Below, one piece after another: positions 27,001 through 58,116 of a stretch of DNA of 64,000 nt. Both the position numbers and the translations under genes were made by a program. The DNA is taken from positions 124,001 through 188,000 of the IMG/VR virus record IMGVR_UViG_3300020810_001156; one strand, written 5' to 3'. Under the pieces are notes generated by a model. It saw only the letters and a list, made by a program, of their open reading frames with translations. It had not been told where the DNA came from and made no database searches. Each line of letters begins with the position of its first letter. Position 1 is the stretch's first letter.

Positions 27001-29682
27001 TTCTCAAACAATGGAGCATCCAATGAAAACTCAATCATACAAGATTATGACCCTTGGGGTAGACCGGCTATTGTTTGGAGAGCATTAAATAATGATGCTG
27101 GTTCGAACTCCGATGGTGGTTGGAACAAAACTGTATCAAACTTAGATGGTAACAAATCATATATGTGGGTAACATATGTGAAGCGTGTTGGTTCAAATAC
27201 ATCTGGTACATTCTATTTAGGTTGTAGTGGTGGAGAAACACTTAATATGAGTGGTTCAGCTAATGGTAACCCATATTTTACGGCATTTGGAATTAGTGGA
27301 TTACCACAAGATGTTTGGTGTTTAGTAGTTGGTATAGTACATGCAAACAATCACCCATCTACTAGTAGTAGTGGAAAAGGTGGTGTTTGGAGATTGGATA
27401 CTGGTGAAAAAATTCGGGGTTGTACTGATTATAAAATGAGGTACACTGGTACGAGAAACCAAACTCATAGAACTTATTTATATTATTCAACAAATCCTGC
27501 TGCACAATTAAAATGGTGGGGACCTGGTGTATATGAAATTAATGGTAACGAACCATCTATTGAAACATTAACTGGTAATAGAGCAAATGATGGTAATGGT
27601 TTAACATTTAATAACGCATCTCAAATTATAATGCCCGCATATGGTGGAGGTACGGTAAGATTTAGAACCAACACACATTGGGATAGTAGAACTGGTATTG
27701 ACTTTATCGGAACGGGTACTGATGAATTCAGAATGAGTTCGGATAGTGGTAACTTGAATTTGAGAGTGGATGGTTGGATGTACAACTATGATGTAACTTA
27801 CTCTCCTCGTTACTATGACCAAAACAGTACATCATATTACGCAGACCCTGCTTCTACATCGTACTTCAACGATATGAGGGCAAATATCTACTATGATAGA
27901 GATAATACCTCATATTACGCTAACCCTGGTCAAACATCGTACTTCAACGATATTAGAACTAATATCATTTACGATAGAGAGAATACTGCATACTACTTCG
28001 GTAGTGGACAGGGTGATGCTCGTATGAATACTGCTAGAGCGTGGAACTTCTACGCTGATGATTGGTTCAGAAACTATAATCAATATGAAGGTTTATACAA
28101 CCAAGCAACTGCTAACCATTGGTATGCAGATGGTACATATTGGAGTATTGGTGAAAGTGATAACGCTAAAGGTATTAGAATTAGAGATGGACACCAAGGT
28201 ACTATTAGAGGTTATTTCTACGCAGAAGATAACAATACTATTGGTATCTTAGATTCTGATGGAAACTGGGCAGTAAGAGTAGTTAGAGATTCGTATGTAG
28301 AACTTAGAGACAATAATGAAGTTACCTTCAGAGCTGGGCAAGGTGGTGTAGATGGAAACTATGGTACTGTTCAAACTCATGGTGGAGGTAAAGGTGGTTG
28401 GGAAGGATACTCAATCAATGGTAGATATGTATTCATGTCTGCTGATTCTTCTGGTGCTGGTATCTTCAACGATATTGATAACGAGTGGATGGCTTATTTC
28501 AATAGAAATGGTAGTACCGAACTAATGTGGAATGGTGCTAGACAAATGAATACCGATTCTTATGGTATCTATGTAAGAGACCAAGTAAGAGCACAAGTTT
28601 ACTATGACCACGATACTGGATACTATGGTAACTTTAATTCTACTTCTAGATTTAATGCAACCGTAACCAATACTTCATACTTTGGTTCAGATACAAATAA
28701 GGGTAGAGCACAGGGTTATGGGACTTATTCATCGTCTATGCATAAAATTGCATATATGTCCTTTGACTGGAACGCTCAATACGATTACTACTACTATCAC
28801 GGATTAGCATCTACTGATATCAATGGTAACTTTAGTGATTCAATGTCATTAAACTCATTTAATGATGTTAATATTAGATTAGATAGTAACAATAATAATA
28901 CTAACTCTTATCTAAGAATACATGATAATGGTGCTGGTAATTCTATGAACGTAGCATATATTGGACGGGAAAATGGAAATGCAATAGCATACTTCTACAA
29001 TAGAGTATATGGTGCTATCTACTATGATAGAAATGATGGTAATTACTATGTAGACCCGAATGGGACATCTCAACTGAATCGGATTGATATCAATTCGCAA
29101 ATTAGGCATAGAGGTGATACCAATACATATATGCAGTTCCATGCATCTGACCAATGGAGAGTTGTAACTGGTGGTTCGGAAAGATTAGAGGTAAACAACT
29201 CACAAATCTACGCTACTCGAGTATTTAGATGTACGCAAGATATTATAGCATACTACTCAGATGAAAGATTAAAAGATAAGAAAGGTAAAATTGGAAATGC
29301 ACTTTCTAAGATTCTTTCATTAGATGGTTTCTACTACGAAACTAATGATTTAGCAAAAAAAGTTGGATTTACCGAAGAAGGATTACAAGTAGGTTTATCA
29401 GCACAACAGGTTAGAGATGTTGTACCTGAGGTTGTTCACTTAGCACCATTTGATTCCGATTACGATGAAAATGGAAATCTATATTCTAAATCTGGTGAAG
29501 ATTACTTAACAATAAAATACGATAGATTAATTCCTTTAGTAATTGAAGGTATTAAAGACCAGCATAAGATTGTAAGTTGGAACAACACCAAAATGAAAGA
29601 ATTAGAAGGTATTATTGAAAAACAACAATCTGAAATTGAAGAATTAAAAAAATTAGTAAAACAATTAATTAATAAAGGTTAA
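18082..29682 (+). CDS. giant tail fibre (3866 aa) with Gly-X-Y tract and C-terminal peptidase S74 intramolecular chaperone
   Basis: C-terminal YSDERLK...GLSAQQV..VVPEVV...YDRLIPLVIEGIK plus coiled coil; repeated NQ.VRTTD.P.F and DT.TYIQFHA.DQWRVVTGG.ERLEVNN modules. Confidence 0.9.
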   Translation: MSYKGIDPNGINQISQSLVSLYVNGERQIDISTENVDIINDLNVQGSVSASIFSGSGEELFNIPPTALTTDAQNQIFSGSATASISPNKGFKVNVDTSISGALNVSESLTVGGVISGDGSGITNINADSIGDIDKLKSGSAEAVISPNLGFEINVDTEISGTLDISGSLRTDDTLKVDKSADIGTDLDVGNNVTIGNDLTVAGKITSTELHTTYLSSSVVYATGSNKFGDGASDKQEFTGSVGIKGDLSVDGNIDFSGNLTADDLPTGTSSEVVVFDTTTGTFQRKFNASSSGTSGTSGSSGSSGSGGTSGSGGTSGTSGSGGSSGTSGSGGSSGTSGSGGSSGTSGSGGSSGTSGSGGTSGSGGSSGTSGSGGTSGTSGSGGSSGTSGSGGSSGTSGSGGSSGTTGSSGTSGSGGTSGEDGTSGTGGSSGTGGSSGTGGSAGTSGSAGTSATAGTAGTSGSSGSSGTTGSAGTSGSGGTSGTSGSGGSSGTSASSGTGGTSGSGGTSGTSGSGGSSGTSGSAGSTGSAGSSGTGGSSGSGGSSGTAGSGGSSGTSGSGGTSGTTGSSGTGGSAGTSGSGGTSGSGGTSGSGGSSGTSGSGGSSGITGAGGSAGTSGSGGTSGSSGTSGDDGTSGSGGTSGSGGSSGTSASSGTGGTAGTSGSGGSSGTSGSGGTSGTSATSGSGGSAGTSGSGGSSGTSGSGGSSGTSGEQGTSGSDGTSGSGGTSGSGGTSGSGGSSGTSGSGGTSATAGSGGTSGSGGSSGTSGSGGSSGTAGSGGSSGTSGSGGSSGTAGSGGTSGSGGSSGTSGSGGTSGSAGSSGTLSLTGNTDNGVITLNGSAPNATVESNLTFDGTTLNVQGNLTVTGTTTTVNTETINLADNIILLNSNETGTPSQNAGIEIERGTASNKQFIWNESSDRWVADSNLQTSGNLYSTGGQLFLNETAGAITKITNENNLSIYSDHLVNFLESDASSTKAVFGLNGGNFSFNTGTLNTSYTMYVNGTFFANTVNTGQGNTEVYLMNQNVRTTDTPKFANLQLSSNNTPTIYFNGTSDGGDGASSDMAIQATPEGLNFIEPEQSNRIQFQILDDTGVNAPYGYQLNGTTVIDTSRNLVNIGTINTGQGATEVYLMNQNVRSSDSPTFNRLTLSQATGTAPLTVSSTTLVSNLNADLLDGQHGSYYAIYDHIRSLGTRAFTNGSNPNITTAQVISEMESDGAFDSYTSVFKTSWSYAGNYNLTDAGRFTETAGSSWITWTDNSSDSTRGNITALAIAPNTGGSAGRVFIYNDQGSSYAPGWREVWTSLSDGAGSGLDADLWDGYQFSDYLNQAVKTNSTPTFSGVYTSNIGINDSGFDVYINFSDANPTFRGQGHGGQFTFYGDKDQNASILYLGSIDAAKIVDAGVAMYAPIYYDSNDDNYYVNPAGTSNLNGLTVNGEINGSIDAATRLSSNTGTESDSFQYWNTINNSTLNPDTNWWYGMRLGHGNASTYYSATLAISFFSDDMRFRRLQAGTYQTWRTIGHDGNIPYAFRMNQDVRTTDSPTFAGLNLGNGNLNTVENIYLDNAIISQGDTNTYIQFHAGDQFRVVTGGSERLEVNNSTTTLATNLQINSHAIDMDLNNVADNAISLREVRNSTWPFVFVTNGVGNDNSSGFWVGSNGYPDMRLRRNDGTVRALISSWERSYVSNGFSISGGTLDMNNNDIVGVDQIIHEGDSDTYIQFHASNEWRVVTGGGERLEVNNTNTTIQNNLIVNGNVTYNGGVNLGDDYTIGKFTYVSIGDLGASGTQARTFEIARLAMDYNDWNDAGTFEVELHEDYYGRGDRKTYTVWWGYYNAWQVYLTDSRVWADNRMQVRIGSPVTISGDIRYVPVYVDVRYYGQVDVMIKTNKTVQYTDNTPSGGQAYINKSPGATNISDFTPDSEVFPTANSGQIAVPRVRFTSTSVGAWNVFNYGGAVGSGNFQDWTNSAGEMNYIQVNNLASGFSNHPTGVYTYGGVLSLRGANHSFQLYAAHTGDLAYKTQWNNDNYSGWRRILDSTNYPYAANMNQYVRTTDSVTFNEIYNNGWFRNNQSGEGLYNQATGAHWVSDADASWTARDSASSIRIRMKTNGSSERGSFYANSSNQIGILDAGGSWAIRHQNDYGTQFYTDGTTEEFRIGRDTVSGNYGTVQTRTTRGGWGGYSINGGWVFMHDHSNAAGIYNDYENEWAILMYRNSYVRLHFNGAGKLETTNTGISVTGNVVGTGTLDMDSKYHILGVSNNWDAVGQYAQTNLHFQGHQMFWIGAGNGTWFTGTANQKSQASGLAADANYAHDLLITTMYSDASYDRGITFAVSNNNDENSGWRLGKWHSGDARDASKLVVDGGLFVKGGYTDEYDYYANDYSSYYSAPAGQPHWGGDSGYFNRPSATFSTAIQIQSGNGGTNSRHPQIQFHQYGYGGPVIEYDGPEDILKFRGNSSRLDWVQFDTSGVSDGLRINYDQIYSYNRPLHLNHSANQNIYMVCASGGNVGIGHDTASQRLDVNGSVIIRTDLYMDNGRIYDVEDIFLNDRIYHDSDTNTYIQFHANDQWRVVTGGGERLEVNNGTTTVQNNLYVNGNRNRIGNGNDDRTHINDMLYVGATDSGDSHLYFGEGGYHAISYGAHWYWDSGYTFSWYMRNNNSDTLMMRYITNNNGYVYWYRHFHMNNYDINYVNQLHFNAGVRFYDDSNNNYLNFQADDTNGPTGIRFRDGNGTQYGYVYGDGDGANFGLLNRDGQWAVRTTNVQTSMYYDGAEKIYTRSDGVYVNGNIFASRFYDTNTSYYLDPASTSYLNDVRVNILYDRGATGYYWHGGSTSRMYAAEFINRVVIGGRFDYNAYNSVGSTRLHFGGGNSDANANYYIGTNLENYGGNYTKLDLRWHTGIRMGAQPGYGGIRMYNNEDLSTMLFSVGRSSQDVEVTYNLRVGGQKAINSRNHHVGSFTNLATAEDWAVSSTGNGAAALGGTFSNNGASNENSIIQDYDPWGRPAIVWRALNNDAGSNSDGGWNKTVSNLDGNKSYMWVTYVKRVGSNTSGTFYLGCSGGETLNMSGSANGNPYFTAFGISGLPQDVWCLVVGIVHANNHPSTSSSGKGGVWRLDTGEKIRGCTDYKMRYTGTRNQTHRTYLYYSTNPAAQLKWWGPGVYEINGNEPSIETLTGNRANDGNGLTFNNASQIIMPAYGGGTVRFRTNTHWDSRTGIDFIGTGTDEFRMSSDSGNLNLRVDGWMYNYDVTYSPRYYDQNSTSYYADPASTSYFNDMRANIYYDRDNTSYYANPGQTSYFNDIRTNIIYDRENTAYYFGSGQGDARMNTARAWNFYADDWFRNYNQYEGLYNQATANHWYADGTYWSIGESDNAKGIRIRDGHQGTIRGYFYAEDNNTIGILDSDGNWAVRVVRDSYVELRDNNEVTFRAGQGGVDGNYGTVQTHGGGKGGWEGYSINGRYVFMSADSSGAGIFNDIDNEWMAYFNRNGSTELMWNGARQMNTDSYGIYVRDQVRAQVYYDHDTGYYGNFNSTSRFNATVTNTSYFGSDTNKGRAQGYGTYSSSMHKIAYMSFDWNAQYDYYYYHGLASTDINGNFSDSMSLNSFNDVNIRLDSNNNNTNSYLRIHDNGAGNSMNVAYIGRENGNAIAYFYNRVYGAIYYDRNDGNYYVDPNGTSQLNRIDINSQIRHRGDTNTYMQFHASDQWRVVTGGSERLEVNNSQIYATRVFRCTQDIIAYYSDERLKDKKGKIGNALSKILSLDGFYYETNDLAKKVGFTEEGLQVGLSAQQVRDVVPEVVHLAPFDSDYDENGNLYSKSGEDYLTIKYDRLIPLVIEGIKDQHKIVSWNNTKMKELEGIIEKQQSEIEELKKLVKQLINKG
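18950..20545 (+). repeat. Gly-X-Y (GTS/GSG/GSS) coding repeat, ~530 aa
   Basis: Continuous triplet periodicity in the translation. Confidence 0.95.
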
Positions 29683-34145: not shown

Positions 34146-34338
34146 TTATAGTATCCAACTTCATAACCAAATTTGGGAGTTGGTTAACTTTGGTAATGGA
34201 TTTACTTGGAGAGATGTTTACTTCATGCCAATCCAATGGAGAAAGTTTTACTTTAAGAAATTGGTCGATTTAAAAAAGAAGGAAGCAGACGAATACAAAA
34301 AAGCAGAACGTAAATCAAAAGTAAGGGTTAGGAAATAA
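34087..34338 (+). CDS. gp51-like chaperone C-terminal part, probably expressed by +1 frameshift from the upstream gene
   Basis: QIWELV..G.GFTW.DVY.MPI.WRKFY pattern; overlaps the upstream ORF at a T7 run; only a GTG start buried in the upstream CDS. Confidence 0.7.
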   Translation: MKRRHSISRLGYRFFTLPNDYSIQLHNQIWELVNFGNGFTWRDVYFMPIQWRKFYFKKLVDLKKKEADEYKKAERKSKVRVRK

Positions 34339-34354
34339 TCCTTACTTTTTTTTT
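34321..34354 (+). terminator. Rho-independent terminator
   Basis: GTAAGGGTTA-GGAAA-TAATCCTTAC stem (one G-U pair) plus T9. Confidence 0.85.
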
Positions 34355-34396
34355 ATCCAATATTTATAGATGTATAAAACTATAAAGAGATTACCT

Positions 34397-34606
34397 ATGT
34401 CAAAAGAAAAAACAAACGAAGGATTATTTGGGGCAGCCAAAAAATTCTCTGATGCATTTTTTGATGGTTTGAAAACTAATGCAGTTAATAAAGCATTAAA
34501 ACAAGCCGAAAAGAACAAAAAAGTTCCATCTCCTATTATTAAAAAAATGAAACAAATCGATAAACTAGCTAAAGAGCTAGAAGATGATTTAAAGTACTAT
34601 TCATAA
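34397..34606 (+). CDS. small basic hypothetical protein (start probably 34397, MSKEK)
   Basis: ATATTTATA at 34360-34368 abuts the ATG at 34370, which favours the next ATG. Confidence 0.5.
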   Translation: MSKEKTNEGLFGAAKKFSDAFFDGLKTNAVNKALKQAEKNKKVPSPIIKKMKQIDKLAKELEDDLKYYS

Positions 34607-34618
34607 TAATATCTCAGT

Positions 34619-46671: not shown

Positions 46672-46672
46672 A

Positions 46673-46906
46673 ATGGCAAGTATAGTATATAGATTGGTAA
46701 ACACTGGTTTAGCTGGTGAACCAGAACACATAGCACTTCAATCATTGGATAACCGATTAATGTTAGAAATATCTGATATTGATAAGGTTATGGAGGATGG
46801 ACTCAGAGAATGGGATTCTGCTTTAGACTATGATAGAATGTTAAAAACTCCTAATCATCGGTTTAATATACACACCATTAATGGTGAAATTATACTAGAG
46901 CTATAA
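46673..46906 (+). CDS. hypothetical protein
   Basis: 77-aa ORF directly after the endolysin. Confidence 0.5.
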   Translation: MASIVYRLVNTGLAGEPEHIALQSLDNRLMLEISDIDKVMEDGLREWDSALDYDRMLKTPNHRFNIHTINGEIILEL

Positions 46907-46921
46907 AAAAATCAAAATAAA

Positions 46922-47032
46922 TTTGGTAATCTCAAAATAATTCCTTATATTTGTATCAACAAATGAGGAAAATTAACATTTCAAAAAAAATTAAAAAAGA
47001 TTTGGAATTGTTAAAAACTTTTCGTATATTTG
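46922..47032 (+). promoter_or_regulatory. two tandem Bacteroidota-type promoters upstream of SSB
   Basis: TTTG-N20-TATATTTG at 46922-46953 and 47001-47032. Confidence 0.8.
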
Positions 47033-47149
47033 TATAAATATATCTTCAAAATTCCACTTAAAACCAGGTATTTTGATATTTATATAAGGTGTAGGAAAGA
47101 CACCATAATAAAACCAATAAAACAATTAAAACTTTAAAATTTAAAAATT

Positions 47150-50468: not shown

Positions 50469-51827
50469 ATGCAAAATATAGATACTCTTTCAAAATACGG
50501 ACAATCCTTTCAAACGAAGGTACTTTCTTCTTTGATTACGGATGTTCGTTTATTGGATACTCTTAGTGAGATTATACATCCAAAGTTTTTTGAAGCTGAG
50601 GCTAATAAATGGATAGCAGAGGAGATTGTTTCATATTACGATGAATTTAAGAAATCTCCAACATTAGACGTTTTTAAATCCGAAGTTTCGAAGTTAGATG
50701 ATAGAGGGTTTCAGAAAAGTGTAGTAGAGCAATTAAAATTAGTTTTTACCAAAGTTGGTGATTCTGATTTGGATTATGTAAAGAAAGAGTTTTCTTCATT
50801 TTGCATCAACCAAAACCTAAAACAAGCTATTGTTAGTTCAGTTGATTTACTAAAAGCTGGTAACTATGATAGAATCAAAGATTTAGTAGATAAAGCAATG
50901 AAGGTAGGAGTGGATTCAGATATGGGACACGATTACCTTTTAGATTTTGAAGAAAGAACTAACGAAGTTGATAGAAGTACAGTTCCAACTGGTTGGGATT
51001 GTATTAATGAATTGATGGATGGTGGTTTGGGACCTGGCGAATTAGGAGTAGCAGTAGCACCTTCTGGTGTTGGTAAAACTTGGGTACTATGTGCAATCGG
51101 AGCAGCAGCTGTTAAGAGAGGATTAAATGTAGTACATTACTCTTTGGAATTATCAGAACATTATGTGGGACAGAGATACGATACTGTATTTACACAAATC
51201 CCATCAGCAGATGTGAAAGATAAGAAAGAAGAAGTAAAAGAGAAAATCAATAGATTGAGTGGAAAACTTCTTATTAAGTATTTCCCACCAAAAGGTATAT
51301 CTGCTAAAAAATTAGAATCCCATATTGAGAAGATGACAGCAGCAGGAAATAAACCTGATTTGATAATTATTGATTATGCTGATTTGTTATTATCTCACAC
51401 TAATAAATCCGATTCAACCTATGGTGAGCAAGGTGGTGTTTACATTGAGTTGAGAGGTATTAGTGGTGAATTGGGTATTCCTATTTGGACAGCATCCCAA
51501 ACCAATCGTTCAGCAATTGATTCTGAAGTTATTGAAGCGGATAAGGTAGCAGATTCCTACGCTAAGGTAATGAACGCTGATTTCATTATGAGTATCAGTA
51601 GAAAGAGTAAGGATAAATTGAACAATACTGCAAGATTCCATATTATGAAAAACCGATTTGGACCCGATGGAATTACTTTCCCATCTAAGATGGATACCAA
51701 TACTGGATTCATTGAGGTTTATGATGGCAATTCATCAGATGGAATTATTACACAAAAAGAATCTGCAAATGGAGAACAAATGGAGAAAAAGTTACTTCAT
51801 AAAAAGTATGTTGAAAACTTTGGGTAA
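50469..51827 (+). CDS. replicative DnaB/gp41-like helicase
   Basis: GGLGPGEL...APSGVGKT, YSLEL, IIDYADL, WTASQ.NR, KNRFG. Confidence 0.93.
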   Translation: MQNIDTLSKYGQSFQTKVLSSLITDVRLLDTLSEIIHPKFFEAEANKWIAEEIVSYYDEFKKSPTLDVFKSEVSKLDDRGFQKSVVEQLKLVFTKVGDSDLDYVKKEFSSFCINQNLKQAIVSSVDLLKAGNYDRIKDLVDKAMKVGVDSDMGHDYLLDFEERTNEVDRSTVPTGWDCINELMDGGLGPGELGVAVAPSGVGKTWVLCAIGAAAVKRGLNVVHYSLELSEHYVGQRYDTVFTQIPSADVKDKKEEVKEKINRLSGKLLIKYFPPKGISAKKLESHIEKMTAAGNKPDLIIIDYADLLLSHTNKSDSTYGEQGGVYIELRGISGELGIPIWTASQTNRSAIDSEVIEADKVADSYAKVMNADFIMSISRKSKDKLNNTARFHIMKNRFGPDGITFPSKMDTNTGFIEVYDGNSSDGIITQKESANGEQMEKKLLHKKYVENFG

Positions 51828-51921
51828 CTATCAAAATTTGTACAAAATATCAAAAAACAAAAAAGTAAGAAATTTAATATTGGAACTTAATTTTTTTTCA
51901 ATATATACAATAGTTATAATC

Positions 51922-51953
51922 ACCGAGCAGCAATCGAAGGTGTTCGGTTTTTT
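51922..51953 (+). terminator. hairpin + U-tract (terminator or attenuator)
   Basis: ACCGAGCA...TGTTCGGT stem followed by TTTTT. Confidence 0.55.
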
Positions 51954-51982
51954 AATTTAATTAATTTATAAATATATTATCT

Positions 51983-52153
51983 ATGGCAACATCACAAGAA
52001 TTATTCGAACAAATCAAAGAACTCTTCGTTGAGTTTGAAGAAAATCACACTGCAACTACTAAAGCAGGTAAATCAAGAGCTAGAAAGGCAATTGGTGAAA
52101 TTAAAAAATTAGTAACCGATTACAGAAAAGCTTCTGTTGAAGAAAATAAATAA
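51983..52153 (+). CDS. histone H1-like Hc1-family protein (56 aa; not in ORF track)
   Basis: Translated by hand: MATSQELFEQIKELFVEFEENHTATTKAGKSRARKAIGEIKKLVTDYRKASVEENK, matching the Hc1-like KA...RARK...E..KL...(Y/F)RK.S pattern. Confidence 0.8.
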   Translation: MATSQELFEQIKELFVEFEENHTATTKAGKSRARKAIGEIKKLVTDYRKASVEENK

Positions 52154-52158
52154 TCGTA

Positions 52159-52569
52159 ATGGATGTAATTGAGTATCTCCAACATTGTGTCAAAACCGAT
52201 ATAGCACCTTCTCCAATACATGGAATTGGTACATTCGCTTTAAGAGATATTGAAGTTGGTGAATCTCTTTTTGAAGTGTGGAAAGGTGATACTCGAATTT
52301 ATACCATTGAAAGGGATAAATTTGAGGAATTACCCCACTACACTAAAAAATTAATCTTAAAAGGGTATCTTAATAAACCCGAATACCCAGTTTATTGGTT
52401 TAGATTATTTAACGATTGTTATTGGAATTTGGCTAATCCAATAATGCATACAAACACAGCCGAAAAAAATGGTAACTTCGATTCAATCACTAAAAAAGTT
52501 ATCAAGCCAATCAAAGTTGGTGAAGAAATTTTAGGAACCTACAATTTAAACGATACAATATTAAAATGA
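52159..52569 (+). CDS. SET-domain protein (putative lysine methyltransferase)
   Basis: SPIHGIGTFALRDI..GE and I..GEEILGTY motifs; the NHS motif appears degenerate (HTNTA). Confidence 0.8.
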   Translation: MDVIEYLQHCVKTDIAPSPIHGIGTFALRDIEVGESLFEVWKGDTRIYTIERDKFEELPHYTKKLILKGYLNKPEYPVYWFRLFNDCYWNLANPIMHTNTAEKNGNFDSITKKVIKPIKVGEEILGTYNLNDTILK

Positions 52570-52877
52570 CATTTGATGAATTGATTGAAAACATCACCCA
52601 ATGGGCTGATGACAAGGGGATACTTGTTCCTGATAATGCTCCAAAACAATCTATGAAGATTATGGAGGAGTTAGGTGAAACAATGGGAGCAATCCTAAAA
52701 GGAAAAAAGACTGATGAAGTTATCGATGGTATCGGTGATATATTAGTTACAGTTATTATTTTAGCAAAACAATTAGGTTTAGAACCTACCGAATGTTTGG
52801 AATCAGCTTGGAATGAAATCAAAGATAGGAAGGGAAAGACCGTAAATGGTACATTTATCAAAGAAGAAGAACTATGA
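52566..52877 (+). CDS. MazG-like nucleotide pyrophosphohydrolase
   Basis: WADDKGI...Q.MK.MEELGE...DGIGDILVT...AWNEIKDRKG...NGTF.KE. Confidence 0.85.
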   Translation: MTFDELIENITQWADDKGILVPDNAPKQSMKIMEELGETMGAILKGKKTDEVIDGIGDILVTVIILAKQLGLEPTECLESAWNEIKDRKGKTVNGTFIKEEEL

Positions 52878-54154
52878 GTATATTTGTAGATACTACAGCG
52901 GAAGATGTTCACTTCGTAACTAAACGAGGTGGAGAAAAAGAGAGTTTTAAATTAGAAAAAATTCAAAATTCTATCCTAAAGGCAATGGAATCCATTGATA
53001 GGGTAGATGAGGAAGTAGCAGAAAAGGTTGCAAGAACTGTGGAAAGAAGTTTGTTTAAATACGAACACATCACTACTGTAACAGTAGATGAAATTGGTGA
53101 TGTTGTAGAAAACAAACTTATGGATGTTGGATTAAACAATGTAGCAAAAGAATACATTCTATATCGCTCAAAAAACAAACCAAACATCTTTAAGAAAAGA
53201 GTAAATCTTAAACCTTACGAATATCCACAATTAGTGGAGTATGTTGATGCTATTAGACACTCTTATTGGGTTCATACTGAGTTCAACTTCACATCAGATA
53301 TCCAAGACTTTAAAGTACATCTGAGTGAAAAGGAAAGAACCGCAGTAGAAAGAGCTATGTTAGCAATATCCCAAATTGAAATCGCTGTAAAAACCTTTTG
53401 GGGAGATATCTACAAAAAAATGCCAAAACCTGAGATTGGAAATGTTGGAGCAACTTTCGCTGAATCGGAAGTTAGACATGCTGATGCATATTCAAACCTA
53501 ATTCAGGTTTTAGGATTAAACAATGAGTTTGAAAACTTAATGGAAGTACCTGCGATTCGTAGAAGAATCAAATATTTAGAGAAATCTATTAGTGGAGCTC
53601 GTTCTATTGAAAATAGAGATTACTTTGAATCAGTAATACTTTTCTCTATGTTTATTGAGAATGTATCACTATTTTCACAATTCTTAGTGATGTTATCATT
53701 TAACAAACATAAGAATGTATTGAAAGGTATTAGTAACGCTGTTGAAGCAACATCAAAAGAAGAAAACATTCATGCTGAATTTGGATTTGATTTGGTTAAC
53801 ACAATCAAAGCTGAGAATCCTGATTGGTGGACTGATGATTTAGTTGAAGATATTATTGATGCAACTTTAGATGCATACGATGCTGAGGCTGAAATCGTAG
53901 ATTGGATGTTTGAAAAAGGAGATTTAGATTTCCTAACCAAAGAACAAACCTTAGAATTTATTAAAGATAGATTCAACAGGTCATTAAAATCAATTGGTAT
54001 CGATAGTGTTTTCAGTATTGATGAATCTTTATTAGAAACAACTGAGTGGTTTGATGATGAAATCCTTACCACAAAACATACCGATTTCTTTAACAAAAGA
54101 AGTATAAATTATAGTAAAAAACAAAAATCGATTACAGAAGACGATTTATTTTAA
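52874..54154 (+). CDS. nrdB: ribonucleotide reductase beta subunit with N-terminal ATP-cone
   Basis: VTKRGG...F..EKI...I.KA...VE..LM...VAKEYILYR ATP-cone; ferritin-like E..EVRH..Y...EE..H; DFF near C-terminus. Confidence 0.92.
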   Translation: MSIFVDTTAEDVHFVTKRGGEKESFKLEKIQNSILKAMESIDRVDEEVAEKVARTVERSLFKYEHITTVTVDEIGDVVENKLMDVGLNNVAKEYILYRSKNKPNIFKKRVNLKPYEYPQLVEYVDAIRHSYWVHTEFNFTSDIQDFKVHLSEKERTAVERAMLAISQIEIAVKTFWGDIYKKMPKPEIGNVGATFAESEVRHADAYSNLIQVLGLNNEFENLMEVPAIRRRIKYLEKSISGARSIENRDYFESVILFSMFIENVSLFSQFLVMLSFNKHKNVLKGISNAVEATSKEENIHAEFGFDLVNTIKAENPDWWTDDLVEDIIDATLDAYDAEAEIVDWMFEKGDLDFLTKEQTLEFIKDRFNRSLKSIGIDSVFSIDESLLETTEWFDDEILTTKHTDFFNKRSINYSKKQKSITEDDLF

Positions 54155-54166
54155 GAAGTTACAATT

Positions 54167-55873
54167 ATGAGCGATAGAAAATTATTTGATTGGATTAACG
54201 AAGAATCCGTTACCTTTTTAAGAAGGGGGTATTTAAGTGAAGGTGAAGAACCTTTAGATAGAATTAAAACAATTGCAAACCATGCAGAAAAACTATTAGA
54301 AATCGAAGGATTTGCTGATAAGTTTATTGATTATATGGGTAGAGGGTGGTATTCACTTTCATCACCTGTATGGGCAAACTTTGGTAAGAAAAGAGGTTTA
54401 CCAGTTTCTTGTTTTGGTTCTAATATTGGTGATAACATTGAATCAATTCTATATACTCAAGCTGAAGTTGGTGAAATGAGTAAAATGGGAGGCGGAACTT
54501 CTGGTTACTTTGGTAACATCAGAGGTAGAGGTGCTGAAATTACTGATAATGGACATGCACCTGGCGCTGTTCACTTTATGAATCTCTTTCAAAGTGTAGT
54601 AGATAATATTTCACAAGGTTCAACTCGTAGAGGTAGATTCTCACCATACTTACCAATCGAACATCCAGATATTATGGAGTTCTTAGAAATTGGAACTGAA
54701 GGTGCAACTATCCAAGACCTTACACATGCGGTAACTGTTTCTGATGAGTTTATGGAAGAAATGATTGCTGGTGATACTGAAAAAAGAGCTGCTTGGGCAA
54801 AAGTAATCCAACGAAGAGGTGAAATCGGATATCCATATATTATGTTCTCAGATACGATGAACAAAAATACTGTGGATGTTTATAAAGATAAAAACGCTAA
54901 AATCTATAACTCTAATCTATGTTCTGAAATCGCTCTTCATAACTCAGAGGAAGAATCATTTGTTTGTGTACTTTCATCTATGAATGTTCTACACTATGAT
55001 GAGTGGAAGGATACTGATGCAGTTGAAACGATGACTTACTTCTTAGATGCGGTTGTAACCGAATTCCTTACTAAGATTGAAGCTATTAGAGATAATGGTA
55101 CAATTGAAGGTAAAAGAGCATTCTTCTACTTAGAAAAAGCATACAACTTCGCTAAAAGACAAAGAGCATTAGGTTTAGGTGTTTTAGGATGGCACTCATT
55201 TATTCAATCAAAAGGATTACCATTTGATAGTAGAGATGCGGCAAGATTAAATGTTGAAGTATTTAAACTAATCAAAGAAAAATCATATAAAGCATCCGAA
55301 GAGATGGCTGAAAAATATGGTGAACCTGAATACCTCAAAGGATATGGTAGAAGAAATGTAACTTTGAACGCTATTGCACCTACCACATCTTCAGCATTTA
55401 TCTTAGGACAGGTATCACAATCAATTGAACCAATTTGGTCAAATTGTTATGTAAAAGATGTTGCTAAAATGAAAGTAACAATCAAAAACCCAATCTTAGA
55501 AAAATTACTTGAGGAGTTGGGTAAAAATGATAAAGAAACTTGGAATAGTATTAAACAAAATGATGGTTCGGTTCAGCATTTAGAGTTCTTAACTCCTATA
55601 CAAAAAGAGGTATTCAGAACTTTTGCTGAAATCAATCAATCTACTATTATTAACCAAGCAGCAATCAGACAGGATTACATTGACCAATCACAATCTTTGA
55701 ATCTAATGATTGCACCTGATATGCCAACTAAGGATGTAAACAAACTCCTTATTGATGCATGGAAGTTAGGAGTTAAAACACTTTACTACCAACACTCAAT
55801 GAATTCAGCACAAGCTTTCGCTAGAAAGAAACTTGGATTGAATGATTTACATTGTGTTGCTTGTGAGGGATAA
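54167..55873 (+). CDS. nrdA: ribonucleotide reductase alpha subunit (short, no ATP-cone)
   Basis: PVSCF, SNLCSEI, IAPTTSS, DQSQSLN, KTLYY, C-terminal CVACEG. Confidence 0.95.
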   Translation: MSDRKLFDWINEESVTFLRRGYLSEGEEPLDRIKTIANHAEKLLEIEGFADKFIDYMGRGWYSLSSPVWANFGKKRGLPVSCFGSNIGDNIESILYTQAEVGEMSKMGGGTSGYFGNIRGRGAEITDNGHAPGAVHFMNLFQSVVDNISQGSTRRGRFSPYLPIEHPDIMEFLEIGTEGATIQDLTHAVTVSDEFMEEMIAGDTEKRAAWAKVIQRRGEIGYPYIMFSDTMNKNTVDVYKDKNAKIYNSNLCSEIALHNSEEESFVCVLSSMNVLHYDEWKDTDAVETMTYFLDAVVTEFLTKIEAIRDNGTIEGKRAFFYLEKAYNFAKRQRALGLGVLGWHSFIQSKGLPFDSRDAARLNVEVFKLIKEKSYKASEEMAEKYGEPEYLKGYGRRNVTLNAIAPTTSSAFILGQVSQSIEPIWSNCYVKDVAKMKVTIKNPILEKLLEELGKNDKETWNSIKQNDGSVQHLEFLTPIQKEVFRTFAEINQSTIINQAAIRQDYIDQSQSLNLMIAPDMPTKDVNKLLIDAWKLGVKTLYYQHSMNSAQAFARKKLGLNDLHCVACEG

Positions 55874-56165: not shown

Positions 56166-56369
56166 ATGCCAATACTAAGAGGACAGACTCATCCTTCTGC
56201 AAAATTAACGGATGAGCAGGTTATACAAATAAGAAGGTTATGGAAAATGGGACACCGAAATGTAAGAGTGATAGCTCGAAACAATAAGGTATCCCCAGCC
56301 AATATCATTAAGATTGTCAAAAATAAAACTTGGACACACCTAAATGAATTTTGGTCTGGTAGTTTATGA
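56166..56369 (+). CDS. small HTH DNA-binding protein
   Basis: G..HP.AKLT..QV..IR...IA....VS...I..I...KTW.H, resembling the HTH tail of HNH endonucleases but standalone. Confidence 0.7.
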   Translation: MPILRGQTHPSAKLTDEQVIQIRRLWKMGHRNVRVIARNNKVSPANIIKIVKNKTWTHLNEFWSGSL

Positions 56370-57133
56370 AAGAGGAGAAAACATATTGTGATACTTCTAA
56401 ACTTTCCATTCGTCTTATAACCAAATCGGTAGCGAAGGATATCATTGTTAACAACCATTATAGTGGATTGTGGACAAAGGTATCTTACGCAATTGGTTTA
56501 TTTACCTCTGATGTAGAAGAACATCCTTTTTTTGATAATGTAGAAGATAAACTAATTGGAGTAGCTTGTTATGGAGACCCAATTGGTAGAAGTGCTGGAC
56601 AATCAATATCCCCTTTATTGGAAAGAACTGAAGTATTAGAACTAACTCGATTATTCGTATTCGATGGATATGGTTCTAATATAGAGAGTTGGTTCTTAGG
56701 TCAAACTTTTGATTGGTTAAGAGAGAATGTACCACAAATAAAAGCACTTATTTCATATTCAGACCCTAAAGAAGGGCATTGTGGTACAATTTACCAAGCA
56801 ACTAATTGGTTGTATCAAGGTAACAAACTAAGATTCAATGATAGTTGGGATTTCAGATGGGAAGCAGGTGGTGATTGGCACCACGGAAGAACTTCTTATG
56901 TGAAATTTGGAACAAATGACCCCAAAGAAATACAAAAAATGATATCATCTACTTTTTGGATAAAGAAAAATCCAAGAAAACATAGATATGTGTACATTTT
57001 AGCCAAAGGTGGTGAAAGAAGGAAGTTGTTAAACAATATTAAACATCCAACCTTCCCCTATCCTAAAGAAAATGAACAATTTGTGGAAGAAATTCATAGA
57101 ATGGACCCGATAAATTTGGAAATTACAAAATAA
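56366..57133 (+). CDS. Mom-like GNAT DNA-modification enzyme (copy 1)
   Basis: I...HYS, LIGVA.YG.P, VLELTRL, N.ESWFL, LISYSDP..GH.GTIYQATNW.Y.G, KHRYVY. Confidence 0.82.
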   Translation: MKEEKTYCDTSKLSIRLITKSVAKDIIVNNHYSGLWTKVSYAIGLFTSDVEEHPFFDNVEDKLIGVACYGDPIGRSAGQSISPLLERTEVLELTRLFVFDGYGSNIESWFLGQTFDWLRENVPQIKALISYSDPKEGHCGTIYQATNWLYQGNKLRFNDSWDFRWEAGGDWHHGRTSYVKFGTNDPKEIQKMISSTFWIKKNPRKHRYVYILAKGGERRKLLNNIKHPTFPYPKENEQFVEEIHRMDPINLEITK

Positions 57134-57163: not shown

Positions 57164-57322
57164 ATGACTGAATCAGAAGAAATTGAAGAAATCTTAATGG
57201 AATCATCATCTTATGGATTAAGAATAGAAGTAATGAAAACTGCTTCTGAAATTATGGGAAGTAATCCCAAAATGAGAAAAGTAGATGCATACCAACAAGC
57301 TTTCAACGAATGGGTAAAGTAG
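57164..57322 (+). CDS. small hypothetical protein (52 aa; not in ORF track)
   Basis: MTESEEIEEILMESSSYGLRIEVMKTASEIMGSNPKMRKVDAYQQAFNEWVK; sits 17 nt after the promoter and overlaps the next start. Confidence 0.65.
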   Translation: MTESEEIEEILMESSSYGLRIEVMKTASEIMGSNPKMRKVDAYQQAFNEWVK

Positions 57323-58116
57323 AAGGAAAGAAATATTGTGATGCTAGTAAAGTAAGTATTGCACCAATAGCTAAATCTATCGCTAAAGATATGATTATCA
57401 AAAAGCATTACACTCATGCTTGGACTGCATGTAGGTACGCTTTAGGTATCTATCATCAAATGGATGAAAAAGATATCTTTGGTAATGATAAAAAGTTGGT
57501 AGGAGTAGCTGTATATGGATTCCCAGTAGGAGCAAAAGCATCCACCTCAGTTTGTGAGGGATTAACAAAAGATAACATCTTAGAACTTACTCGATTGTAT
57601 GTTGATGATGGGTATGGTTCAAACATTGAGAGTTGTGCATTAGGTAAAACCTTCCAATGGTTAAAGGATAACGATACCAACATCAAAGTTCTTCTATCTT
57701 ATGCTAATAATGGACAAGGGCACTTAGGTGGGATTTACAAAGCAACCAATTGGATTTATCAGGGATTGAATACTGATATCGCTCTGATGCCAAATTGGGG
57801 TATTTCACTATCTAATGACCCATACGATTGGATTCACTCTCGAACTGTATTCAACAATTGGGGAAGTGGTAACTTAGAACATCTCAAAAAAGAAATCGGA
57901 AAAGAGGGATATAAAGAATTTTGGAGAAGAGAAGAACCTCCAAAACATAGATACATTCAGATTCTTGCTCAAAATAAAAAAGAGAAAAAGGATTTGATGA
58001 AAAGGTTGAAGCATGAGATTCGACCTTATCCAAAAGAGTTGAATGATTATAATACTGAAGTAGTACATCATTTAACCTATCCACCAGAGGAAAGTAACGA
58101 AATAAATTTTTGGTAA
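57310..58116 (+). CDS. Mom-like GNAT DNA-modification enzyme (copy 2)
   Basis: KKHYTH, LVGVAVYG.P, ILELTRL, LLSYA...GH.GGIYKATNW.YQG, KHRYIQ; clear paralogue of 56366..57133. Confidence 0.82.
   Translation: MGKVEGKKYCDASKVSIAPIAKSIAKDMIIKKHYTHAWTACRYALGIYHQMDEKDIFGNDKKLVGVAVYGFPVGAKASTSVCEGLTKDNILELTRLYVDDGYGSNIESCALGKTFQWLKDNDTNIKVLLSYANNGQGHLGGIYKATNWIYQGLNTDIALMPNWGISLSNDPYDWIHSRTVFNNWGSGNLEHLKKEIGKEGYKEFWRREEPPKHRYIQILAQNKKEKKDLMKRLKHEIRPYPKELNDYNTEVVHHLTYPPEESNEINFW

What the first reader, a model, noticed from the sequence alone, without database searches (positions are those of the whole stretch)
51983..52569. Histone-like Hc1 gene abutting a SET-domain methyltransferase: possible phage nucleoid writer-substrate pair
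Seen: a 56-aa ORF missed by the track (51983-52153; KAGKSRARKAIGEIKKLVTDYRKAS) ends 5 nt before a SET-domain gene, and a late-type ATAGTTATA motif lies upstream at 51910. Established: Hc1-like proteins condense DNA in Chlamydia and have short Bacteroidota homologues, and a chlamydial SET protein has been reported to methylate Hc1. Inference: the phage encodes a DNA-condensing protein plus a lysine methyltransferase that switches its DNA binding, or modifies the host homologue, giving a minimal chromatin-like control system. Caveat: the SET NHS motif is degenerate (HTNTA).
Basis: partly seen in the sequence, partly recalled or inferred. Interest (0 to 1): 0.85.

Follow-up and report, generated by a model that had tools for sequence, protein, structure and literature searches.

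The report
Phage Hc1-like gene beside SET gene
A large marine phage carries a small Hc1-family protein gene right next to a SET-fold methyltransferase-like gene, but comparison with about 100 related phage fragments shows the two genes come and go independently, so nothing indicates that they work as an enzyme-substrate pair.

Summary
A 56-aa ORF (51983-52153) matches Pfam Hc1 well above threshold. Five bases later a 136-aa ORF (52159-52569) is a minimal SET-fold protein: the Pfam score is marginal, but the AlphaFold model has pLDDT 96 and its best structural matches are all SET domains. Both genes are under purifying selection. The ATAGTTATA site upstream belongs to a real intergenic motif class and is invariant in relatives.

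The writer-substrate interpretation is not supported. In relatives the Hc1 gene is fixed between DnaB and the ribonucleotide reductase genes. SET lies right after Hc1 in about a third of loci, behind NrdB in a third, and is absent in a third. SET travels with MazG (overlapping stop/start), not with Hc1. Hc1 lysines are identical with or without SET. Fifteen more distant phage SET loci have no Hc1 nearby, and 26 loci from genome assemblies, mostly bacterial MAGs, have no homologue of this SET nearby.

The phage protein corresponds only to the conserved N-terminal (dimerisation) part of chlamydial Hc1 and lacks the lysine-rich DNA-binding tail. The chlamydial SET-Hc1 precedent is contested. The SET motif NHS is NTA here.

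Verdict: two ordinary, separately inherited phage genes. Coupling is not excluded but unlikely.

The parts
51900..51921 (+). Conserved promoter-like block AATATATACAATAGTTATA plus the following N2-CAC. It contains the ATAGTTATA site at 51910-51918.
   Evidence: Invariant in 19 diverged relatives while the flanks vary. It belongs to the ATAKTTATA class: 14 copies against 5.2 expected, and all 11 + strand copies are intergenic. The class also precedes the tail sheath and fibre genes. Promoter function and timing are inferred.
51922..51954 (+). Stem-loop (8-bp stem, -12.5 kcal/mol) followed by a run of six T, lying between the motif and the Hc1 start codon.
   Evidence: z = -3.9 against shuffles. 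A hairpin sits at the same place in 11 of 12 relatives, with entirely different stem sequences. Either a 5'-UTR stabiliser or the terminator of the DnaB transcript; this is not resolved. No Rfam family matches.
51983..52153 (+). Hc1-family small protein gene (56 aa). The product is a two-helix hairpin with an acidic helix 1 and a basic helix 2.
   Evidence: PF07432 at 37.7 bits. AF2 pLDDT 96.9 with helices 4-21 and 27-54. Charge -5 for residues 1-24 and +6 for 25-56, net +1. dN/dS 0.03-0.20. 803 relatives at E<=0.001 in the protein collection, the 120 listed being 78-96% identical, and 529 clusters at 50% identity.
52159..52569 (+). Minimal SET-fold protein gene (136 aa). Probably a protein lysine methyltransferase, with NHS changed to NTA.
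   Evidence: PF00856 at 23.2 bits against a cut-off of 22.4. A profile of the family hits MLL SET domains in the PDB at E 0.005 over residues 15-129. AF2 pLDDT 95.9. Foldseek finds vSET, MLL1 and SETD8 and viral SET proteins. G22, G24, N99, E123 and Y128 are invariant; E122, Y70 and N106 nearly so. dN/dS 0.16-0.36.
52566..52877 (+). MazG-like nucleotide pyrophosphohydrolase gene. Its start overlaps the SET stop codon (ATGA).
   Evidence: PF12643 and PF03819; phrog_1992 and phrog_715. The SET-MazG junction is kept in both genomic positions of the cassette.
52874..55873 (+). Ribonucleotide reductase genes: NrdB with an N-terminal ATP-cone (52874-54154) and NrdA (54167-55873). They lie downstream in the same gene string.
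   Evidence: PF00268 plus PF03477; PF02867. Hc1 directly precedes NrdB in relatives that lack SET or carry it behind NrdB.
50469..51827 (+). DnaB-like helicase gene, the conserved upstream neighbour of Hc1.
   Evidence: PF03796. It is the upstream neighbour of Hc1 in loci of this lineage that reach far enough upstream.

Best explanation
These are two separately inherited phage genes that happen to be neighbours in one sub-lineage.

(1) The 56-aa gene is a core gene of an abundant marine phage lineage. It encodes a helical-hairpin protein of the short Hc1 family, the roughly 55-60-aa form also found in bacteria such as Marinimicrobia and Bacteroidota. It corresponds to the conserved N-terminal dimerisation part of chlamydial Hc1 and has no lysine-rich tail. 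It sits behind a conserved phage promoter-like block and a 5' stem-loop, at the head of the nucleotide-metabolism gene string. Inferred: it acts as a small dimeric protein that uses its basic second helix to bind nucleic acid or a partner protein, imitating or supplementing the host's own copy.

(2) The 136-aa gene is an accessory, fast-evolving minimal SET-fold protein, probably translationally coupled to MazG. It probably methylates a lysine on a host or phage protein that is still unknown. Its NHS-to-NTA change leaves activity unproven.

Shown: the gene identities, the fold, the conservation and the synteny patterns. Inferred: promoter function, nucleic-acid binding, methyltransferase activity and the target.
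For: Synteny in about 100 IMG/VR loci is RecA-FEN-DnaB-Hc1-[variable]-NrdB-NrdA. SET is adjacent to Hc1, or behind NrdB, or absent, and is always joined to MazG in the two main arrangements. L022 and L025 carry Hc1 at 96% and 93% identity and no SET. All Hc1 lysines (K27, 30, 35, 41, 42, 49, 56) are the same in 28 SET+ and 22 SET- loci. Fifteen more distant SET loci have no Hc1, MazG or RNR within 6 kb. Hc1 homologues in Flavobacterium phage immuto, a 634-kb uncultured phage and 26 bacterial MAG loci have no homologue of this SET nearby. SET is the least conserved gene of the block: in L036 it is 70% identical where DnaB is 98%. Small SET proteins are common in tailed-phage clusters of the ESM Atlas. 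The conserved N-terminus of Hc1 mediates dimerisation and the Lys-rich C-terminus binds DNA (PMC2848022). The phage protein ends at residue 56 with net charge +1, and the listed C-terminal extensions among the nearest 150 clusters are not lysine-rich.
Against: In the window and its closest relatives the two genes are 5-18 nt apart with no terminator between them, so they are probably co-transcribed. That is compatible with a functional link. In this lineage every SET homologue of at least 54% identity lies within about 1.2 kb of Hc1. That is expected from synteny alone, but it does not exclude coupling. The basic helix 2 offers seven invariant lysines as possible targets. SET-less relatives were seen only as fragments of about 12 kb, so a SET gene elsewhere in those genomes is not excluded.
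Confidence: 0.6

Rival explanations
1. The SET protein methylates lysines of the phage Hc1-like protein, or of the host's homologue, and so changes its nucleic-acid binding. The pair would be a small writer-substrate system controlling compaction of phage or host DNA.
For: The genes are adjacent and probably co-transcribed in the window. The SET fold has an intact GxG motif, a conserved tyrosine and the E-E...Y motif. Helix 2 of Hc1 is rich in invariant lysines. From my own knowledge, not checked here: an archaeal SET (Go1-SET) methylates the chromatin protein MC1-alpha, and C. pneumoniae SET was reported to methylate Hc1 fragments, as cited in PMC2904774.
Against: Adjacency and co-occurrence are not conserved. 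There is no SET-associated difference in Hc1 sequence. The phage Hc1 lacks the DNA-binding tail. NUE did not methylate full-length Hc1. The His of the NHS motif is replaced.
Confidence: 0.12
2. The SET-fold protein is not an active methyltransferase. After losing the NHS histidine it serves as a binding module, for example one that sequesters a host protein or binds SAM or a lysine-containing peptide without turnover.
For: In this family and its nearest outliers the motif is N-T/S, whereas more distant phage homologues keep N-H-S-x-x-P-N. SUV39H1-H324L, a change in this motif region, is described as a mutant with impaired methyltransferase activity (PMC2171490). The Pfam score is only marginal.
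Against: The other catalytic-site features are invariant or nearly so under purifying selection: G22, G24, Y70, N99, N106, E122, E123 and Y128. A Thr or Ser hydroxyl could replace the lost contact. From my own knowledge, the contacts of this His with the cofactor are largely through the main chain.
Confidence: 0.2
3. The Hc1-like protein is a late, DNA-associated protein that helps to compact or package the phage genome, as suggested for 'moraphages'. It does this independently of SET.
For: Its promoter-like motif belongs to the class found upstream of the tail sheath and fibre genes. The neighbouring replication genes carry the other class, TATATTTGT. The protein is very strongly conserved. 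The same idea is voiced for PF07432 proteins of Bacteroidota jumbo phages (PMC12619734).
Against: The net charge is only +1 and there is no Lys-rich tail. The motif class also precedes an SSB-like gene, so 'late' is not established. The same transcript would carry RNR genes, which are usually early or middle genes (my own knowledge). There are no virion or expression data.
Confidence: 0.25

Closest known systems
Chlamydial histone H1-like protein Hc1 (HctA), Pfam PF07432
   Same: There is significant sequence similarity over the whole 57-position Pfam model. The conserved motif is K-A-x-x-x-R-A-R-K-x-x-G-E-x-K-K-L, and the region is helical.
   Different: Chlamydial Hc1 has an additional lysine-rich C-terminal domain that binds DNA, while the conserved N-terminus mediates dimerisation (PMC2848022). 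The phage protein is 56 aa with net charge +1 and has no tail. It belongs to the short form that dominates the nearest 150 clusters.
PF07432 proteins reported in Bacteroidota jumbo phages ('moraphages', Perez-Hernandez et al. 2025, PMC12619734); unannotated homologues in Flavobacterium phage immuto and Lak phages; a homologue annotated 'histone H1' in Synechococcus phage S-SRM01
   Same: All are phage-encoded short Hc1-family proteins. tblastn gives 62-64% identity to immuto and to the 634-kb phage LR745206. A role in compaction has been speculated but not tested.
   Different: The genomic context differs: after GroEL in immuto and after a RecA-like gene in LR745206. No homologue of this SET was found anywhere in the 50,697 phage records.
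PBCV-1 vSET (A612L), a minimal viral SET-domain H3K27 methyltransferase
   Same: It is the best structural match in the PDB (3kma, E 4e-5). Its size is similar (119 against 136 aa). Both are SET cores without pre- or post-SET Zn modules. The GxG and E-E-I-x-x-x-Y motifs are shared.
   Different: Identity is about 19%. From my own knowledge, vSET keeps the canonical NHS motif and acts on eukaryotic histone H3. The phage protein has N-T-A and infects a bacterium that has no histone H3.
Chlamydial SET proteins (cpnSET / NUE) and the archaeal Go1-SET with MC1-alpha
   Same: These are prokaryotic SET enzymes proposed to methylate chromatin-type proteins of their own cell.
   Different: NUE is a secreted effector that methylates host histones and did not methylate full-length Hc1 (PMC2904774). 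No conserved genomic linkage between SET and Hc1 is seen here. The statement about Go1-SET rests on my own knowledge.

Membership tests
Hc1 family (PF07432) | Sequence match above the curated Pfam threshold over the full domain | tested here: met
   37.7 bits against a cut-off of 23.5, covering model positions 2-56 of 57. The precomputed PF07432 label is on nearly all close relatives.
Hc1 family (PF07432) | Lysine-rich C-terminal DNA-binding domain, as in chlamydial Hc1 | tested here: not met
   The protein ends at residue 56 with 8 K, 3 R, 9 E and 1 D, net +1. In Hc1 the C-terminus is the DNA-binding part (PMC2848022).
Hc1 family (PF07432) | DNA binding and nucleoid condensation | not testable with these tools
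   Only a two-helix hairpin model is available. It has no significant structural neighbour and there is no solved relative.
Hc1 family (PF07432) | Late-stage expression | tested here: inconclusive
   The upstream motif is of the class found before the tail sheath and fibre genes. That class also precedes an SSB-like gene, and there are no expression data.
SET-domain protein lysine methyltransferase (PF00856) | Sequence match above the curated Pfam threshold | tested here: met
   23.2 bits against 22.4, which is marginal. A family profile hits MLL1-4 SET domains at E 0.005-0.05 over residues 15-129.
SET-domain protein lysine methyltransferase (PF00856) | SET fold | tested here: met
   AF2 pLDDT 95.9 and pTM 0.87. 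All 50 listed Foldseek PDB hits are SET or PR domains with probability about 1.0, although TM-scores are only 0.33-0.45. The BFVD hits are viral SET proteins.
SET-domain protein lysine methyltransferase (PF00856) | GxG cofactor-binding motif near the N-terminus | tested here: met
   H21-G22-I-G24-T-F-A. G22 and G24 are invariant in 57 sequences and align with HGRGLF of MLL1.
SET-domain protein lysine methyltransferase (PF00856) | N-H-S/C-x-x-P-N motif | tested here: not met
   Alignment to phage homologues that carry NHSxxPN gives N99-T100-A101...N106. Both Asn are kept (N99 invariant, N106 nearly so). The His is Thr in this family and Ser in the nearest outliers. HMMER's alternative alignment to MLL1 would place P94 at the His position. 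Under either alignment the His is absent.
SET-domain protein lysine methyltransferase (PF00856) | E-L-x-x-x-Y motif with the catalytic tyrosine | tested here: met
   G121-E122-E123-I-L-G-T-Y128. E123 and Y128 are invariant; G121 and E122 are at least 90% conserved. The motif aligns with GEELTYDY of MLL1.
SET-domain protein lysine methyltransferase (PF00856) | SAM binding and methyl transfer | not testable with these tools
   No ligand modelling or assay is available.
Writer-substrate gene pair (SET enzyme plus its chromatin-protein target) | Conserved genomic linkage or co-occurrence of the two genes across relatives | tested here: not met
   SET is adjacent to Hc1 in about 16 loci, separated by NrdB in about 15, and absent in about 15. 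None of 15 more distant SET loci has Hc1 within 6 kb. None of 26 loci from genome assemblies, mostly bacterial MAGs, has a homologue of this SET within 4 kb of Hc1.
Writer-substrate gene pair (SET enzyme plus its chromatin-protein target) | Substrate features that track the presence of the enzyme | tested here: not met
   Seven lysines and the whole of helix 2 are identical in SET+ and SET- loci.
Writer-substrate gene pair (SET enzyme plus its chromatin-protein target) | Physical interaction and methylation of the partner | not testable with these tools
No assay is possible.

The most novel reading that the evidence does not exclude
In this sub-lineage the phage SET protein, an NHS-to-NTA variant, does methylate the short Hc1-family protein, either the phage's copy or the nearly identical helix 2 of the host's copy. 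That would tune how the protein binds nucleic acid during infection. It would be the first protein-lysine-methylation control of a nucleoid-type protein encoded by a bacteriophage.
Probability: 0.1. Interest if true: 0.8.

Novelty: new member of a known kind. Interest (0 to 1): 0.35.

Why it matters
If the pairing were functional, it would show chromatin-style post-translational control in a bacterial virus. The data here do not support that. What remains useful:
- The short Hc1-family protein is one of the best-conserved genes of a very abundant marine phage lineage. It is seen on hundreds of ocean metagenome contigs, has its own conserved control region, and has unknown function.
- Small SET-fold proteins are common in tailed phages, and I know of none with an identified substrate.
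- This window offers a compact, easily expressed pair of proteins with which both questions, and the coupling hypothesis, can be tested cheaply.

Tried and rejected
- Megablast of the region against 50,697 phage records found no match.
- tblastn of the SET protein against the same records found no match.
- PHROGs gave nothing meaningful for Hc1 or SET. NCBIfam and PADLOC gave nothing for either.
- An Hc1 profile against PDB sequences gave only chance hits. Foldseek with the Hc1 model gave only generic helical hairpins such as ribosomal protein chains, the LSD1 tower and ING4, all with E > 0.6. I rejected these as uninformative.
- An Rfam scan of 51700-52250 gave only sub-threshold chance hits.
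- The sigma-70 promoter and terminator consensus scan found no more than shuffles do, and it missed the hairpin at 51922-51954 because of that hairpin's long loop.
- The T4-type late promoter TATAAATA occurs at 51967-51974 but is not enriched: 14 found against 10.5 expected. Most copies are simply the reverse strand of the ATATTTATA motif, so I rejected it as a separate signal.
- I looked among the best 150 representative clusters for long Hc1 relatives with Lys-rich tails. The longer ones fetched have non-lysine-rich, heterogeneous C-terminal sequence that looks like read-through. No chlamydial Hc1 sequence was obtained from a tool, so the N-terminal mapping rests on the Pfam model length, the literature and memory.
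- Pedersen et al. 1996 (PMC177758) is not held.

Full report
**1. What is in the sequence**

- The window corresponds to positions 124001-188000 of the 252.6-kb viral contig IMGVR_UViG_3300020810_001156.
It matches Pfam PF07432 (Hc1) at 37.7 bits, gathering score 23.5, across positions 2-56 of the 57-position model.
- Five bases after its stop codon, a 136-aa ORF (52159-52569) matches PF00856 (SET) at 23.2 bits. The cut-off is 22.4, so this is marginal.
- The SET stop codon overlaps the start of a MazG-like gene at 52566-52877 (ATGA).
- Next come NrdB with an N-terminal ATP-cone, NrdA and a thioredoxin. Upstream lie RecA, a 5'-3' exonuclease/FEN and a DnaB-like helicase.
- Both small genes are real. 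dN/dS against relatives is 0.03-0.20 for Hc1 and 0.16-0.36 for SET. The protein collection holds hundreds of relatives of Hc1 (803 at E<=0.001) and about 100 of SET.

**2. The upstream motif**

- ATAGTTATA is at 51910-51918. Counted with one mismatch allowed, it is no more frequent than chance: 44 found, 44.9 expected.
- The class ATA[T/G]TTATA is enriched. There are 14 copies against 5.2 expected, and none of 100 shuffles reach 14.
- All eleven + strand copies lie in the roughly 4% of the window that is intergenic, upstream of + strand genes. These genes include the tail sheath and genes that follow or lie between two giant collagen-repeat fibre genes.
- A second intergenic motif, TATATTTGT, occurs 8 times against 2.7 expected. 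It resembles the -7 element TAnnTTTG of Bacteroidota promoters (my own knowledge). It precedes the DNA-polymerase-like, SSB, DnaB and Mom-like genes.
- Upstream of Hc1 the block TTTTT-N-AATATATAcaATAgTTATA-N2-CAC is invariant in 19 diverged relatives while the flanks vary.
- The block is followed by a hairpin at a fixed distance. Eleven of 12 relatives have it, with completely different stem sequences. In the window it spans 51922-51948 at -12.5 kcal/mol (z = -3.9) and is followed by six T.
- The hairpin is either a 5'-UTR stem-loop or the terminator of the DnaB transcript. The transcription start cannot be placed from sequence alone.

**3. The SET protein**

- A profile of 57 family members finds only SET-domain methyltransferases at the top of the PDB sequence search, for example MLL1-4 at E 0.005-0.05 over residues 15-129.
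- The AlphaFold2 model is confident, with pLDDT 95.9.
- Its best Foldseek matches are PBCV-1 vSET, MLL1, SETD8, PRDM and EZH2. Probability is about 1.0 and E is 4e-5 to 3e-3, with modest TM-scores of 0.33-0.45. In the viral library the matches are SET proteins of giant viruses and of uncultured tailed phages.
- Invariant or nearly invariant residues include H21-G22-x-G24 (the GxG motif), Y70, N99, N106, E122-E123 and Y128 (the E-E-x-x-x-x-Y motif with the catalytic Tyr).
- Alignment with more distant phage homologues that carry a canonical NHSxxPN shows that this family has N99-T100-A101...N106. The motif histidine is Thr here, and Ser in the nearest outliers. HMMER's alignment to MLL1 shifts this region and would put P94 at the His position.
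- A mutation in this motif region of SUV39H1 (H324L) is described as a mutant with impaired methyltransferase activity (PMC2171490). Activity here is therefore plausible but unproven.
- The ESM Atlas shows that small SET-domain proteins of 129-147 aa form many clusters in tailed phages. A SET gene in a phage is not unusual in itself.

**4. The Hc1-like protein**

- It is predicted with high confidence (pLDDT 96.9) to be a two-helix hairpin, with helices at 4-21 and 27-54.
- The first half is acidic (-5) and the second basic (+6). Net charge is +1 and pI is 8.0.
- There is no solved relative and no significant structural neighbour.
[quoted passage not shown] The phage protein corresponds only to the conserved part and has no tail.
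- An exhaustive profile search finds 529 clusters at 50% identity. Most of the best 150 are 55-65 aa. The longer ones I fetched carry non-lysine-rich, heterogeneous C-terminal sequence that looks like read-through.
- Cellular 58-aa homologues at 51-65% identity, with an almost identical second helix, occur in Marinimicrobia and other MAGs.
- Phage copies were already noted in Bacteroidota jumbo 'moraphages' (PMC12619734). tblastn also finds them in Flavobacterium phage immuto, Lak phages, Synechococcus phage S-SRM01 and a 634-kb uncultured phage.
- 'Histone-like DNA condenser' is therefore an annotation carried over from the long chlamydial protein. It is not something the short form has been shown to do.

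**5. Test of the coupling hypothesis**

- I fetched 80 loci by Hc1 similarity and 16 by SET similarity and located the window's eight proteins in each. The lineage shares the order RecA-FEN-DnaB-Hc1-[variable]-NrdB-NrdA. After removing duplicates:

| Arrangement downstream of Hc1 | Approximate number of loci |
|---|---|
| Hc1-SET-MazG-NrdB (SET adjacent) | 16 |
| Hc1-NrdB-SET(-MazG)-NrdA (SET separated by NrdB) | 15 |
| No SET between Hc1 and NrdA (Hc1-NrdB-NrdA or Hc1-NrdB-MazG-NrdA) | 15 |
| Hc1 in an unrelated context, no SET within 6 kb | 5-7 |

- L022 and L025 have Hc1 proteins 96% and 93% identical to the window's and no SET.
- The SET-MazG junction, with its overlapping stop and start, is kept in both positions. 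SET is therefore linked to MazG rather than to Hc1.
- SET is the least conserved gene of the block. In L036 the identities are RecA 98%, DnaB 98%, Hc1 82%, SET 70% and MazG 88%.
- All lysines and the whole of helix 2 of Hc1 are identical in 28 SET+ and 22 SET- loci.
- A profile-based scan for more distant SET homologues gave 15 loci at 28-55% identity. None has an Hc1, MazG, RNR or DnaB homologue within 6 kb.
- None of the 26 loci from genome assemblies, mostly bacterial MAGs, that carry Hc1 has a homologue of this SET within 4 kb. No homologue of this SET exists anywhere in the 50,697 deposited phage records, including those that carry Hc1.
- The chlamydial precedent is also weaker than stated. 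C. trachomatis NUE did not methylate full-length Hc1. The authors contrast this with the earlier C. pneumoniae report, which used truncated Hc1 fragments (PMC2904774).

**6. Best explanation and rivals**

- The most likely reading (confidence about 0.6) is two independent genes.
  - The first is a core, strongly conserved short Hc1-family hairpin protein. It has its own conserved control region and heads the nucleotide-metabolism gene string.
  - The second is an accessory, faster-evolving minimal SET-fold protein, probably translationally coupled to MazG, with an unknown host or phage target.
- Three rivals remain open:
  - A catalytically inactive SET module (about 0.2).
  - A late DNA-compaction role for the Hc1-like protein independent of SET (about 0.25; this overlaps with the best explanation).
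- Not excluded: co-transcription in the window's clade, and a SET gene elsewhere in the genomes that I saw only as fragments of about 12 kb.

**7. Novelty and verdict**

- Both gene kinds are already catalogued in phages, and their pairing is specific to one sub-lineage. I class the finding as a new member of known kinds, with a noteworthy NHS-to-NTA variant of the SET motif.
- Interest is moderate to low (0.35).

Noticed in passing
window intergenic regions, e.g. 41865, 46946, 47025, 50436, 57139, 63673 (TATATTTGT); 1312, 15995, 17377, 29696/29702, 30348, 34360, 43160, 45311, 47076, 51910 (ATAKTTATA): There are two distinct over-represented intergenic motif classes. A Bacteroidota-like -7 element lies upstream of replication-type genes. 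An ATA[T/G]TTATA element lies upstream of structural genes and of Hc1. This suggests two promoter classes and a host in the Bacteroidota/FCB group.
   Followed up: partly
window 52874-54154: The ribonucleotide reductase small subunit carries an N-terminal ATP-cone (PF03477 at residues 14-102), while the large subunit is short at 568 aa. From my own knowledge, this arrangement is known from some Flavobacteriia.
   Followed up: no
window 56366-57133 and 57310-58116: Two tandem genes of the Mom protein family (PF25680, E 1e-43 and 2e-45) suggest that the phage hypermodifies its DNA.
   Followed up: no
window 2219-15991 and 18082-29682: Two giant ORFs of 4590 and 3866 aa. Both have collagen triple-helix repeats, and the second ends in a Peptidase_S74 intramolecular chaperone domain. 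They are probably very long fibres.
   Followed up: partly
L100-L123 (genome-contig loci): Marinimicrobia (Neomarinimicrobiota) MAGs encode 58-aa Hc1-family proteins whose second helix is almost identical to the phage protein's (GSRARKAIGEIKKLVTDYRKASV). This may be a hint about the host or the gene's donor. The scan used a single peptide pattern, so other phyla may have been missed.
   Followed up: partly
loci, e.g. L009, L039 versus L036: The RNR genes downstream of Hc1 are only 32-39% identical between sub-lineages, while the flanking DnaB and Hc1 stay at 73-98%. A different RNR type appears to have been swapped into the same slot. In L036 identity drops sharply just after DnaB.
   Followed up: no
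L083:3083-3256 and L083:6001-6168; L153:2653-3129 and L153:3036-3563: One viral contig carries two Hc1-family paralogues 3 kb apart (46% and 80% identical to the window's). Another carries two tandem SET genes.
   Followed up: no
L099 (MAG 'Candidatus Muiribacterium halophilum') and L002 (LR745206, 634 kb phage): In both, a RecA-like gene is followed directly by the Hc1-family gene. The MAG contig is probably a binned phage fragment related to the huge phage.
   Followed up: no
window 34146-34618 and 46672-47149: Two unusually long 'intergenic' stretches of 473 and 478 nt in an otherwise tightly packed genome. Each contains promoter-type motifs and possibly small unlisted ORFs.
   Followed up: no
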